A DNA stretch of 62,928 bases, the filler included, from Hyphochytrium catenoides (taxonomy: Eukaryota > Protista > Hyphochytriomycota): NCBI GenBank assembly GCA_900088475.1. It is 6 parts of 6 records of this genome, joined end to end, with 100 filler letters (N's around TTAATTAATTAA, not from the genome) between each part and the next. Parts side by side here need not be neighbours in the genome. Positions count along the whole stretch, not along the records: positions 25,757 to 45,894 come from FLMG01003124.1; 5 more parts are not named here. One strand, given 5' to 3'. Numbering within the stretch: the first letter of the stretch is position 1; each line of letters starts with the position of its first letter. Shown in pieces: positions 43,301 to 45,433 of the stretch. The translations under genes were made by a program, and so were the position numbers. Under the pieces are notes generated by a model, which searched no databases, was not told the origin of the DNA, and saw only the letters and a list, made by a program, of their open reading frames with translations.

Positions 43301-45433
43301 AAGTCATCGAGCTGAGTAAAGCCAATGAAGAGATTGAAGGAGGAAGAGAGGCATAGGGTGTCCCACGACCGGTAGCACACTTCACCTTCGACTCCTCAAG
43401 AATGGCCGCGGCCTTGCTAGGTCCAAACACCGGGATTCCTGCTGCCGTCATAGCATCACTGAGACCCGCAATCAGTGGGGCTTCAGGACCTACGACGCAA
43501 AGGTCCACCTTCTTCTCCTGTTCGCGCATCCAGAGTTACCGATAGTGTGCGATACAGAAAGAGCGAAGAACCCACAAGAAAGAGGCTAGCTTAATGTGTT
43601 ATAGATGGTTGGTCAGCATCTTAAAGCTTCAGAACGCTAGATGAGCAGGAACTGGAGTAGGACCAAATGCGGAGAGGAAAGGGAAGCCAGCAGGTGGCTG
43701 ACCTTGCAGAACTTGATTAGCGCTTGGTGATCCGTCTCCGGAATCTTCAGATTGCTGATTTTCTTAGCGCCCGGCCCGCTATGAGAAGGGGCAGAGGGAG
43801 GAATCAGGCGGAACCAAGGAAAGAGGAGACAAATTAGGTGTCATCGGAGAACACAGCGATTAGGCTTTCTCTGTTCCTTTGTGGAAGGTTGGCCTCTATG
43901 AACGGCATGCAGATCATAACTTTTCGGCAGCTTATATCTGAGCCATCAGGCGCTGTGCCATAGTCTACCGAAGATAGCTCCTCACCTTGCGATCTGGCCA
44001 GACGTCCCTCCATTTCCTGGAGCAACAAATACTTCAGATACCTTAGGGCTTTGGCTCAGCTTCCAAGATATAGCATGCTCTCTCCCTCCTCCGCCCACCA
44101 CCAAGACGGTGCGCTTCTTTTCTGAGAGAGATGAAAGGAGTTGAGAAAGTTGCTTGTCATAGGAAGAGAGCGAGGAAAAGGCGCTTATTGCGAGTTCTCG
44201 TCTCTGGTCCTCTGTAAGAGAGAGTGTGCCTTCGCCCTGGAAAGAACGCAAAGGTCAGCACTCTATGCGGAGGGACAATGCGGACACGGTATAGAAAAAG
44301 CCGCAACCGGTTCGTATGCAAGGAAGCATGGCGAAGTGCCTCGTTGAAATGGAAAAAGGAAATACGGGTTTAGCGCGAGGCACGATGGAAGCGAGCGGCA
44401 GCAAGATCGGCTGGCGCGAATAGGGCGCCACTGACCAAGAAAGGAAGCGTACGTGGCTGGACTTGAAGACGACAGGCAAGATGAAGCTTAGGACTGGAAG
44501 TCAGGCCCTCCGCGCAGTGAAAGGGAGGAGGAAGGCAGGGTGGACAAGGAGTTGGAGAGCGCCGTTGAGGCACGATCATAGTAGCCACACCTTGATGGCA
44601 GATACGATCATGTCGTAGGATGAAGGCGACACCGCAACAGCAACATGCTGATATCTTGTGGCCGCAGCCCTTGATAAGTAGCAGGAGTTAAGGTATGAGA
44701 AGACCCGAAGAGATTACCGAGCAGGGTGGGGGTGATGAAGAGGTGCAGGTATATGGGGACGAAGGGAGATAGTACCATGGGCATTAAGCGATCATACAGA
44801 CAGGCAAACAAGGCAGCAAGAGGTCGCGATGAGGCCGGGACAAGGAGTGCATTGAGAGAAGAGATTCAGTCCATACGAAGAGTATGGCTACCTGATCAGA
44901 GAATGGCTTCCAACATCCTGGCCCAGTTCCACCGGGCTCCCTAATGAGCCTACCACGACAGTGATTTTGTCCGCAGTTCCGCTTATCAAGCTCGTGATGT
45001 TAGCGGCACCAGAAAGCTAAGGAGAAAGTCGAAAGATGAGCATCGAGAGAGACGAAGCGGATTGGTGCCCGAGACAGCTGGGAAGGAGGATGAAGTAGAG
45101 AGAGAGGGCAAGTGAGCGAGCGAGAAAAGCCAATGAGAGGTACGGAGCGGGGAAGAGACAAGACCTAGCCATCTTGGACATAACTGAAGTGGGTCAGACA
45201 AGGAAAATGGTGGGGTTCTATAGGACACGAGGATTAGAGGCTGGGGACGGAAACATTGACTTGGTCACCTCTCTGTGGGGAACATCGTCCTTCACCAGCT
45301 GAGCCCGCAGCTCCGGTGCGTTTACCGTCACGACAATGAGGCCACCATCTCGCAGCTTCTTCGCGAAGTCCACCGCAGCAGAGATATCTCTAGCTTCCTG
45401 AAAAAAGCCCGTGAAGACAGCTAGTGGAGCCAT
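37377..45433 (-). CDS. multifunctional purine biosynthesis protein: degenerate IMPCH/MGS-like + GARS (PurD) + GART (PurN) + AIRS (PurM)
   Basis: GARS: [37 protein letters not shown]...[33 protein letters not shown]: [31 protein letters not shown]...VDGGPI. AIRS: [53 protein letters not shown]. Splice joins run GARS to GART to AIRS in frame. Confidence 0.93.

What the first reader, a model, noticed from the sequence alone, without database searches (positions are those of the whole stretch)
44120..45433. Eroded IMP-cyclohydrolase (PurH N-terminal, MGS-like) domain fused to the front of GARS: a candidate pseudoenzyme or regulatory module
Seen, over four exons: MAPLAVF...[37 protein letters not shown]|[42 protein letters not shown]|[26 protein letters not shown]|[34 protein letters not shown], running straight into GARS. 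This parallels PurH (VEFAKAL...IDxVVVNL...DIGGxxxxRAAAKNxxxVxVVxxPxDY...RxxLAxKAFxxTxxYDxxI). However, the SVSDK, STGGT and GRVKTLHP substrate-binding and catalytic motifs are missing, and there is no AICAR transformylase domain. Established: purH and purD are adjacent in many bacterial operons, and the MGS-like domain of CPS is an allosteric nucleotide sensor. Inference: a relic of a purH-purD fusion kept as a dimerisation, scaffold or purine-sensing domain on a four-domain enzyme.
Basis: partly seen in the sequence, partly recalled or inferred. Interest (0 to 1): 0.75.

Follow-up and report, generated by a model that had tools for sequence, protein, structure and literature searches.

The report
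Dead IMP-cyclohydrolase domain fused to GARS
The first four exons of this purine-synthesis gene encode a catalytically dead copy of the IMP cyclohydrolase domain of PurH, joined to the front of a GARS-GART-AIRS enzyme; the same arrangement is conserved under purifying selection across oomycetes, brown algae, diatoms and other stramenopiles, and I found no paper that describes it.

Summary

- **The junction with GARS needs no splicing.** It lies inside exon 4.
- **The exon model holds.** A profile built from 73 orthologous N-terminal domains was run against all 814 six-frame ORF pieces of the 20-kb piece. Its four best hits are exactly these four exons, in order and abutting.
- **The family is homologous to PurH.** A profile of the domains finds only PurH/ATIC and ForH in the PDB (human ATIC, E 4.6e-17). 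An AlphaFold model of an ortholog's domain (pLDDT 89.7) superposes on the ATIC cyclohydrolase domain (TM 0.84).
- **The catalytic machinery is gone in the whole family.** The GRVKTLHP loop is deleted in 74 of 74 members. None has the Lys137 or Tyr104 equivalent, and there is no transformylase domain.
- **The domain is still constrained.** It sits at the front of about 1,140-aa GARS-GART-AIRS proteins of oomycetes and many ochrophytes. Five oomycete genes are single uninterrupted ORFs. Its dN/dS is 0.05-0.13, against 0.02-0.08 for the catalytic domains.

The domain's function and its origin remain inference.

The parts
45269..45433 (-). Exon 1 (55 aa, starts at the ATG at 45433). It encodes strand 1 to about strand 3 of the dead IMPCH-like domain. 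SVSDK is replaced by F-T-G-F-F plus a 5-residue insertion, and STGGT is replaced by T-V-N-A-P-E-L.
   Evidence: Translation and GT donor. Family HMM positions 6-61, E 3e-7. BLASTP to residues 3-55 of orthologs.
44892..45016 (-). Exon 2 (125 nt, ends in codon phase 2). It covers the region equivalent to PurH IDxVVVNLYPF...DIGG. NLYPF becomes S-L-G-S-P and DIGG becomes D-V-G-S. The GRVKTLHP loop is absent between exons 1 and 2.
   Evidence: AG acceptor and GT donor. Family HMM positions 66-99, E 0.037. Alignment.
44591..44669 (-). Exon 3 (79 nt). Its first base completes the conserved Arg codon. RAAAKN becomes R-A-A-A-T-R (Lys137 equivalent is Thr), followed by [11 protein letters not shown].
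   Evidence: BLASTP to E. coli PurH residues 136-160, E 4e-4. Family HMM positions 99-124, E 0.046.
44120..44236 (-). First part of exon 4: the long C-terminal helix of the IMPCH-like domain ([21 protein letters not shown]).
   Evidence: PF01808 profile positions 29-63, E 0.0015. BLASTP to E. coli PurH residues 164-197, E 3e-5. Family HMM positions 132-168, E 1e-5.
43986..44119 (-). Second part of exon 4: the start of the GARS N domain ([17 protein letters not shown]...), in the same exon and frame as the helix.
   Evidence: GARS_N E 2.5e-15. PDB PurD hits E 2e-12.
41058..43529 (-). Remaining GARS exons (N, ATP-grasp and C domains). Boundaries are approximate and taken from blastx segments.
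   Evidence: Collinear blastx to Phytophthora P0177 residues 231-595.
39764..40778 (-). GART (formyltransferase) exons. Boundaries are approximate.
   Evidence: blastx to P0177 residues 599-790.
37377..39649 (-). AIRS exons up to the stop codon at 37377. The reading frame of the first AIRS exon extends upstream through the GART-AIRS linker, so AIRS is part of the same protein.
   Evidence: blastx to P0177 residues 771-1145. ORF piece 39311-39649. ORF 37377-37733.

Best explanation
The four exons encode a non-catalytic (pseudoenzyme) copy of the IMP cyclohydrolase / MGS-like domain of PurH (ATIC). It forms the N-terminal domain of a four-domain purine-synthesis protein: dead IMPCH, then GARS, GART and AIRS.

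Shown:
- Homology to PurH, and the IMPCH fold in an ortholog.
- Loss of both active-site rim loops, of the phosphate-binding motifs, and of three of the four catalytic residues.
- Conservation of this architecture, under purifying selection, across oomycetes and ochrophyte algae.

Inferred:
- The domain cannot close FAICAR to IMP. That step is done by a separate intact ATIC.
- The domain is kept for a structural role. The residues it conserves (a Gly after strand 1, the Arg of xRAAA, the Asp of VVVD, LA.KAF and the Asp of YD) look like core-packing and helix-packing positions rather than pocket positions.
- Its long C-terminal helix runs into strand 1 of GARS through a linker of only about 5-10 residues. 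It most likely sits as a fixed cap or assembly surface on the GARS end of the polyprotein. Ligand sensing and recruitment of a partner are less likely alternatives.
For: - Exon model and frame.
- The junction with GARS lies within one exon.
- Direct matches of exon 3 and exon 4 to E. coli PurH.
- The family HMM picks out exactly the four exons.
- Orthologs carrying the same N-terminal extension were found with exon 4 and with ortholog queries.
- PF01808 scores above its gathering score in P0003 (36.9 bits), P0004 (29.8 bits) and P0174 (34.4 bits).
- A profile of 9 such domains hits only PurH/ATIC and ForH in the PDB. The best hit is human ATIC (E 4.6e-17), matching residues 7-53 and 90-195.
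- AlphaFold model of P0174:1-157: pLDDT 89.7, pTM 0.85.
- Foldseek: the top 25 hits are all PurH/ATIC or ForH (TM 0.84 to 1pkx). The carbamoyl phosphate synthetase allosteric domain comes next, at TM ~0.5.
- Across 74 family members the GRVKTLHP loop is deleted in all. None has Lys at the Lys137 column and none has Tyr at the Tyr104 column. Arg is kept in 73 of 74, and the two Asp positions in 67 and 70 of 74.
- Five oomycete genes are single ORFs of 1,144-1,147 aa.
- dN/dS of the N-domain is 0.05-0.13, against 0.02-0.08 for the catalytic domains.
- A separate P. sojae ATIC ortholog is listed in PMC2705460.
- Loops 56-71 and 103-106, with Lys66 and Tyr104, close the IMPCH site (PMC9525906).
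Against: - No RNA evidence supports the splicing of exons 1-3 in this genome.
- The window's own domain was not folded. The fold evidence comes from an ortholog that is only about 34% identical, and that alignment included one true PurH row.
- The window keeps the Asp125 equivalent, and the family keeps a Gly at the end of strand 1, where PurH binds the phosphate. Some ligand binding is therefore not excluded.
- The structural role is argued from which residues are conserved. It was not tested.
- dS is close to saturation in most species pairs.
- Whether this genome has an intact PurH cannot be seen from a 20-kb piece.
Confidence: 0.9

Rival explanations
1. The domain is an allosteric sensor. 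The dead IMPCH domain still binds a purine-pathway nucleotide (IMP, AMP, GMP, AICAR or FAICAR) and tunes GARS, in the way the MGS-like domain of carbamoyl phosphate synthetase binds IMP and UMP.
For: - The fold is MGS-like, and the carbamoyl phosphate synthetase allosteric domain is the next structural neighbour after PurH.
- A Gly at the end of strand 1, the position of PurH's phosphate loop, is kept in at least 90% of the family.
- The diatom-type members share a G-x-G-x-R-A-P loop at that position.
- The window keeps the Asp125 equivalent.
Against: - SVSDK and STGGT are both lost.
- Both rim loops that close over the nucleotide are deleted in 74 of 74 members.
- The pocket columns are highly variable between lineages, and mean column identity is 18%. 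That fits poorly with a conserved ligand site.
Confidence: 0.2
2. The domain is a docking module. The pseudo-IMPCH domain pairs with itself or with the genuine ATIC, tying pathway steps 2, 3 and 5 physically to steps 9 and 10 as a hard-wired piece of a purinosome.
For: - ATIC is an intertwined homodimer (PMC9525906).
- The domain is kept under purifying selection without any catalytic residues.
- Oomycetes have both proteins.
Against: - There is no direct evidence.
- ATIC dimerisation is described as depending on the transformylase domain and a beta-ribbon. My recollection that the isolated IMPCH domain is monomeric is unchecked.
- The low conservation between lineages argues against a fixed partner interface.
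- The one complex job was not folded.
Confidence: 0.12
3. The feature is a gene-model artefact or a decaying relic. Exons 1-3 are not part of the mature mRNA in this organism, or the domain is drifting towards loss.
For: - No RNA run was listed.
- The domain is only 30-34% identical to its nearest orthologs, against about 60% in GARS.
- Nannochloropsis and dinoflagellate GARS-GART proteins lack the domain.
Against: - All four exons have open frames, GT-AG borders and compatible phases.
- They are the top four HMM hits of the whole piece, in order.
- The conserved Arg is created by the E2/E3 splice.
- The start Met aligns with the start of the orthologs.
- In oomycetes the same domain lies in one uninterrupted ORF with dN/dS of about 0.1.
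Confidence: 0.05

Closest known systems
IMP cyclohydrolase domain of PurH / ATIC (for example human ATIC 1pkx/1p4r, E. coli PurH)
   Same: - Homologous in sequence.
- Same fold in an ortholog, TM 0.84.
- Same order of elements, including the long C-terminal helix that leads into the next domain.
- Shared Arg of xRAAA, VVVDxxDY and R.LA.KAF..YD.
   Different: - The SVSDK and STGGT phosphate loops are absent.
- The loop 56-71 (GRVKTLHP, with Lys66) is deleted.
- NLYPF and the ~13 residues after it are truncated, and Tyr104 is lost.
- Lys137 is replaced (Thr in the window).
- The domain is followed by GARS instead of the AICAR transformylase domain.
ForH (6nko), a stand-alone IMPCH-like protein of formycin biosynthesis
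   Same: An IMPCH domain without a transformylase domain. It is hit by sequence profile (E 4e-11) and by fold (TM 0.77-0.83).
   Different: ForH is a free-standing bacterial protein. The domain here is fused to GARS-GART-AIRS and lacks the catalytic loops.
Trifunctional GART of animals (GARS-AIRS-GART) and fungal Ade5,7 (GARS-AIRS)
   Same: A multifunctional protein that carries the GARS, AIRS and GART activities of de novo purine synthesis (PMC8449271).
   Different: The domain order here is GARS-GART-AIRS, with an extra N-terminal dead IMPCH domain. The reviews and papers I read describe neither feature.
Allosteric MGS-like domain of carbamoyl phosphate synthetase (1ce8, 5dou)
   Same: Same superfold. 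It is a non-catalytic, nucleotide-binding regulatory domain on a large biosynthetic enzyme, and the structural neighbour next after PurH (TM ~0.5).
   Different: The relationship is much more distant. Pfam MGS (PF02142) does not match here, and no ligand-binding residues could be mapped.

Membership tests
PurH/ATIC IMP cyclohydrolase domain (as a homolog) | Significant sequence similarity to the IMPCH region of PurH | tested here: met
   - Window exons 3 and 4 against E. coli PurH: E 4e-4 and 3e-5, collinear.
- Ortholog domains: PF01808 above its gathering score.
- Family profile against the PDB: only PurH/ATIC and ForH, E 4.6e-17.
PurH/ATIC IMP cyclohydrolase domain (as a homolog) | MGS-like / IMPCH three-dimensional fold | tested here: met
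   Tested on ortholog P0174:1-157 (pLDDT 89.7). The top 25 PDB matches are all PurH/ATIC or ForH, TM 0.84. The window's own joined domain was not folded.
Active IMP cyclohydrolase (as an enzyme) | Catalytic and substrate residues Lys66, Tyr104, Asp125 and Lys137 (human numbering, read from the alignment). The roles of Lys66 and Tyr104 are from PMC9525906. The roles of Asp125 and Lys137 are from my recollection of the ATIC mechanism literature and were not checked in a paper here. | tested here: not met
   - Window: the Lys66 loop is deleted, Tyr104 is Gly, Lys137 is Thr, and only the Asp125 equivalent is kept.
- Family: 0 of 74 have Lys at the 137 column, 0 of 74 have Tyr at the 104 column, and the loop is deleted in 74 of 74.
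Active IMP cyclohydrolase (as an enzyme) | Phosphate-binding loops SVSDK and S(T/G)GGT | tested here: not met
   The window has F-T-G-F-F and T-V-N-A-P-E-L at these places. The family columns show none of the PurH residues.
Bifunctional PurH/ATIC | C-terminal AICAR transformylase domain | tested here: not met
   Only PF01808 profile positions 1-63 of 311 match, and GARS_N starts 2-3 residues after the match, in the same exon. Ortholog lengths of about 1,140 aa leave no room for the domain.
Pfam MGS-like domain (PF02142) | A match to the Pfam model | tested here: not met
   No PF02142 hit for any window exon at E up to 10, or for orthologs at E up to 1. The first ~90 residues are recognisable only with the family profile and by fold.
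Stramenopile IMPCH-like-GARS-GART-AIRS proteins (a grouping defined here) | Collinear four-domain architecture with the ~160-190 aa N-terminal domain | tested here: met
   blastx of 45433-37389 is collinear with Phytophthora P0177 (1,146 aa). The four N-terminal exons match the family HMM in order.

The most novel reading that the evidence does not exclude
The dead cyclohydrolase domain is a functional interaction or sensing module that couples the start of the purine pathway to its end. Either it recruits the genuine ATIC to the GARS-GART-AIRS polyprotein, giving a genetically hard-wired purinosome contact, or it reports pathway end-products back to GARS. It would have been kept for this since before oomycetes and ochrophyte algae diverged.
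Probability: 0.15. Interest if true: 0.75.

Novelty: new variant of a known kind. Interest (0 to 1): 0.5.

Why it matters
- **A new case of enzyme-to-pseudoenzyme conversion.** I recall no described IMPCH-derived pseudoenzyme, and my paper searches, which did not query that term directly, turned up none. This domain has been retained since before oomycetes and ochrophytes diverged. It gives a clean case for asking what a dead metabolic domain does on a multifunctional enzyme: scaffold, sensor or recruiter.
- **A lineage-specific domain order.** Stramenopiles have GARS-GART-AIRS, which differs from the animal GARS-AIRS-GART order. This bears on how purine-pathway fusions arose.
- **A practical annotation problem.** The partial PF01808 hit can mislead automatic naming. 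One Plasmopara protein of this family is named 'putative bifunctional purine biosynthesis protein PurH'. Pathway reconstructions could therefore count this gene as the IMP cyclohydrolase/AICAR transformylase step.
- **A possible target feature.** Oomycete plant pathogens carry the domain and animals and fungi do not, so it is a lineage-specific feature of an essential pathway enzyme.

Tried and rejected
- **Pfam, exon by exon.** Exons 1-3 alone give no hit, even at E 10. Exon 1 against the PDB gave only a chance-level hit to a designed repeat protein. Exon 2 against the E. coli PurH N-domain by BLASTP gave nothing. These exons are too short and too diverged on their own, and the family profile was needed.
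- **RNA evidence.** No run was listed for 43900-45500.
- **Promoter/terminator scan upstream.** It is irrelevant for a eukaryotic gene.
- **Complex prediction, N-domain against the GARS domain of P0174.** This gives no evidence either way.
- **Two-domain AlphaFold model.** pTM was 0.79, but no coordinates or PAE were available, so I could not tell whether the N-domain packs on GARS.
- **Literature searches.** I searched for a description of this architecture and for the GILK01/GILJ01 transcriptome behind P0082. Nothing relevant turned up. Morris et al. 2009 list oomycete purine genes but do not mention this domain.
- **Considered and rejected.**
  - A chance resemblance: rejected.
  - A mis-joined neighbouring purH pseudogene: rejected because the PurH-like helix and GARS share exon 4, and the oomycete genes are single ORFs.
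- **Left untested.**
  - Whether the domain derives from a bacterial purHD operon or from a duplication of the host ATIC exon(s).
  - Which organism the window comes from. It is a stramenopile-like gene, about 60-65% identical in GARS to oomycete and unnamed relatives.
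Full report
**1. What is in the sequence**

The feature lies on the minus strand. Reading 45500-43900 in reverse complement and translating by script gives four exons.

| Exon | Coordinates | Length | Note |
|---|---|---|---|
| E1 | 45433-45269 | 165 nt | begins with ATG, 55 aa |
| E2 | 45016-44892 | 125 nt | ends in codon phase 2 |
| E3 | 44669-44591 | 79 nt | first base completes a split codon |
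| E4 | 44236-43986 | 251 nt | contains the junction with GARS |

- The three introns (252, 222 and 354 nt) all begin with GT and end with AG.
- Upstream of the ATG the frame is closed by a stop codon (ORF 45218-45475).
- The start Met aligns with the start of the orthologs, MKAVFAG....

**2. The junction with GARS needs no splicing**

Within E4, residues 6-40 match Pfam PF01808 (AICARFT_IMPCHas) at profile positions 29-63 (E 0.0015, below the gathering score). Residues 43-79 match GARS_N (E 2.5e-15). PDB PurD chains match the same residues.

**3. The resemblance is more than chance**

- E3 aligns to E. coli PurH residues 136-160 (E 4e-4). The first 40 residues of E4 align to residues 164-197 (E 3e-5). 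The two matches are adjacent and in order. The E. coli PurH sequence was taken by reference from NC_000913.
- Exons 1 and 2 alone were not recognisable.
- I then built an HMM from 73 orthologous N-terminal domains, none of them from the window, and searched all 814 six-frame ORF pieces of the whole piece 25757-45894.
- The four best hits are exactly E1, E4, E2 and E3. They cover abutting profile positions 6-61, 132-168, 66-99 and 99-124 (E 3e-7, 1e-5, 0.037 and 0.046). The next hits have E of 0.9 or more.
- The family's nearly invariant Arg (73 of 74) is encoded in the window by the codon AG|G, which is split across the E2/E3 junction. This is an internal check of the splice model.

**4. Relatives**

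- A full HMMER scan with E4 returned, among ordinary GARS fragments, proteins in which the match starts 50-200 residues into the protein.
- The named ones come from Pinguiococcus and the brown alga Choristocarpus.
- Word searches with P0004 residues 1-160 and with an alignment of full-length members then gave about 80 proteins with a 135-215 aa extension before the GxGGREH motif.
- Named sources:
  - brown algae: Ectocarpus, Pylaiella, Discosporangium
  - other ochrophytes: Phaeothamnion, Chrysoparadoxa, Tribonema, Dictyocha, Triparma
  - diatoms: Amphora, and one labelled 'Amphip...' (name truncated in the listing)
  - oomycetes: Phytophthora, Peronospora, Plasmopara, Peronosclerospora, Saprolegnia, Achlya, Aphanomyces
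- The full proteins are about 1,100-1,200 aa, with Pfam domains in the order GARS_N/A/C, Formyl_trans_N, AIRS/AIRS_C.
- The window gene is collinear with Phytophthora P0177 (1,146 aa) from 45433 down to the stop at 37377. The ORF of the first AIRS exon reaches up through the GART-AIRS linker.
- Nannochloropsis (P0207) and the dinoflagellate Polarella (P0277) have GARS-GART proteins without the extension.
- In five oomycetes the whole gene is one uninterrupted ORF of 1,144-1,147 codons. In those species the fusion rests on no gene model.

**5. Homology and fold**

- PF01808 scores above its gathering score (25 bits) on the N-terminal domains of P0003 (36.9), P0004 (29.8) and P0174 (34.4). The matches always cover profile positions 1 to about 62 only.
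- A profile of nine such domains (A1, with no true PurH row) finds nine distinct PDB sequences, all PurH/ATIC or ForH.
- The best is human ATIC (E 4.6e-17). The first part of the profile aligns to residues 7-53 and the second part to residues 90-195.
- A genuine bacterial PurH (P0164) was itself retrieved by the P0004 domain, at 29% identity over the full 160 residues.
- An AlphaFold2 model of P0174:1-157 was built from a 75-row alignment, 74 family rows plus P0164. It has mean pLDDT 89.7 and pTM 0.85. It shows an alternating strand/helix core followed by a 30-residue C-terminal helix.
- In Foldseek against the PDB, the first 25 matches are all PurH/ATIC IMPCH domains or ForH (TM normalised to the query up to 0.84). 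The carbamoyl phosphate synthetase allosteric MGS-like domain follows at TM about 0.5.

**6. The domain is catalytically dead**

Human numbering can be read off the alignment. Tyr104 lies in NLYPF, Asp125 in DIGG, Lys137 in AAAKN and Lys66 in GRVKTLHP. PMC9525906 describes loops 56-71 and 103-106, with Lys66 and Tyr104, closing over the nucleotide. The roles of Asp125 and Lys137 are from my recollection of the ATIC mechanism literature and were not checked in a paper here.

In the window:

| PurH motif | Window |
|---|---|
| SVSDK | F-T-G-F-F plus a 5-residue insertion |
| STGGT | T-V-N-A-P-E-L |
| ~35 residues containing GRVKTLHP | absent |
| NLYPF | S-L-G-S-P |
| ~13 residues after NLYPF | absent |
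| DIGG | D-V-G-S (Asp kept) |
| RAAAKN | R-A-A-A-T-R (Lys changed to Thr) |

Across 74 family members:

- The GRVKTLHP columns are gaps in all 74.
- No member has Lys at the 137 column (Leu, Val, Trp or Phe instead).
- No member has Tyr at the 104 column.
- Asp125 survives in 11 members.
- Conserved positions are a Gly after strand 1, the Arg (73 of 74), the Asp of VVVD (67 of 74), Leu and Ala of R.LA.KA(F/L) (65 of 74 each) and the Asp of YD (70 of 74).
- The window keeps all of these except the VVVD Asp, which is Ser.

One member (P0082, from an unnamed transcriptome) is less eroded. It has FVSVPDS in place of SVSDK, no insertion at STGGT, and part of the 56-71 loop. This suggests erosion from a genuine IMPCH ancestor.

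**7. Selection**

- Codon alignments of the five oomycete ORFs (NG86) give dN/dS of 0.05-0.13 for the N-domain, against 0.02-0.08 for GARS, GART and AIRS.
- In the least saturated pair (two Peronospora species, dS 0.6-0.9) the values are 0.127 against 0.047-0.070.
- The domain is therefore under clear purifying selection, with about 2-3 times more amino-acid change than its catalytic neighbours.
- Between lineages it is much more diverged. The window is 30-34% identical to its nearest orthologs, against about 60-65% in GARS.
- dS is near saturation in most pairs, so the ratios are rough.

**8. A separate PurH**

Morris et al. 2009 (PMC2705460) list P. sojae Ps109486 as the ortholog of human ATIC (P31939) and yeast Ade16/17. 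At least the oomycetes therefore have an intact enzyme for the last two steps. This cannot be checked for the window's genome from a 20-kb piece.

**9. What it most likely does**

- Established: it is a pseudoenzyme domain of IMPCH descent, retained by selection.
- Inferred: the conserved residues look like core and helix-packing positions rather than pocket residues.
- Inferred: the C-terminal helix runs into strand 1 of GARS through a very short linker. In the two-domain model, helix 124-151 is followed by strand 157-163, and pLDDT across the link is 77-82.
- I therefore favour a fixed structural or assembly role on the GARS end of the polyprotein (about 0.5 of the probability given that the domain is real).
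- Nucleotide sensing comes next (about 0.2). It is supported only by the conserved Gly at the old phosphate site and by the analogy with carbamoyl phosphate synthetase.
- Docking to ATIC or to itself is about 0.1.
- The one docking computation I sent was not folded, for a rule of the tool, and no coordinates were available. None of these roles is tested.

**10. Origin**

- No trace of the transformylase domain remains between them. I did not search directly for intact PurH-PurD fusions, and my searches returned none.
- The PDB scores of the family profile do not point clearly to a bacterial or a eukaryotic source: human 65 bits, Methanosarcina 55, Mycobacterium 49, Cryptococcus 41.
- The origin is open.

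**11. Novelty**

- The papers I could search describe GARS-AIRS (fungi, Amoebozoa) and GARS-AIRS-GART (animals, 'some protists') (PMC8449271).
- None mentions a GARS-GART-AIRS order or an IMPCH-like N-terminal domain.
- The feature is visible in public databases as a partial PF01808 hit. It has led to at least one product name of 'PurH' for such a protein.
- I rate it a new variant of a known kind, of moderate interest.

Noticed in passing
window 37377-45433, minus strand: The domain order of the whole gene is GARS-GART-AIRS, not the animal GARS-AIRS-GART. The same order is seen in all stramenopile relatives. Dinoflagellates and Nannochloropsis have GARS-GART alone.
   Followed up: partly
P0230 (1,150 aa, Logan contig): A different purine polyprotein turned up among the hits: SAICAR synthetase, AIR carboxylase, GARS and GART in one chain. 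Its taxon is unknown.
   Followed up: no
P0187 (Plasmopara halstedii): A member of this four-domain family is named 'putative bifunctional purine biosynthesis protein PurH' in its source record. This is probably a misnaming driven by the partial PF01808 hit.
   Followed up: no
P0089 (654 aa): A protein with a PurN-like formyltransferase domain in front of GARS (GART-GARS order). It may be bacterial. It is another independent fusion onto the N-terminus of GARS.
   Followed up: no
window 29824-30123, minus strand: An exon-like ORF matches Ribonuclease HII (PF01351, E 6.8e-13), so an RNase H2 catalytic-subunit gene lies about 7 kb downstream of the purine gene on the same strand.
   Followed up: partly
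window 26000-26560, 30000-30470, 31830-32380 and 40620-41030: Long CT/GA dinucleotide tracts read as SLSLSL.../ERERER... in the ORF lists. They recur in introns and between genes. One lies in the intron or linker region between the GARS and GART exons.
   Followed up: no
P0165 (1,464 aa, ENA): The closest relative of the window gene by total score carries the GARS region twice (residues 20-482 and 484-909). This is either a tandem duplication or an assembly or gene-model artefact.
   Followed up: no
P0001 (418 aa): The best-scoring hit of exon 4 is a chimeric-looking protein: leucine-rich-repeat sequence followed by two copies of a GARS N-terminus. It looks like a mis-assembled or mis-called animal gene and is unrelated to the finding.
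   Followed up: no
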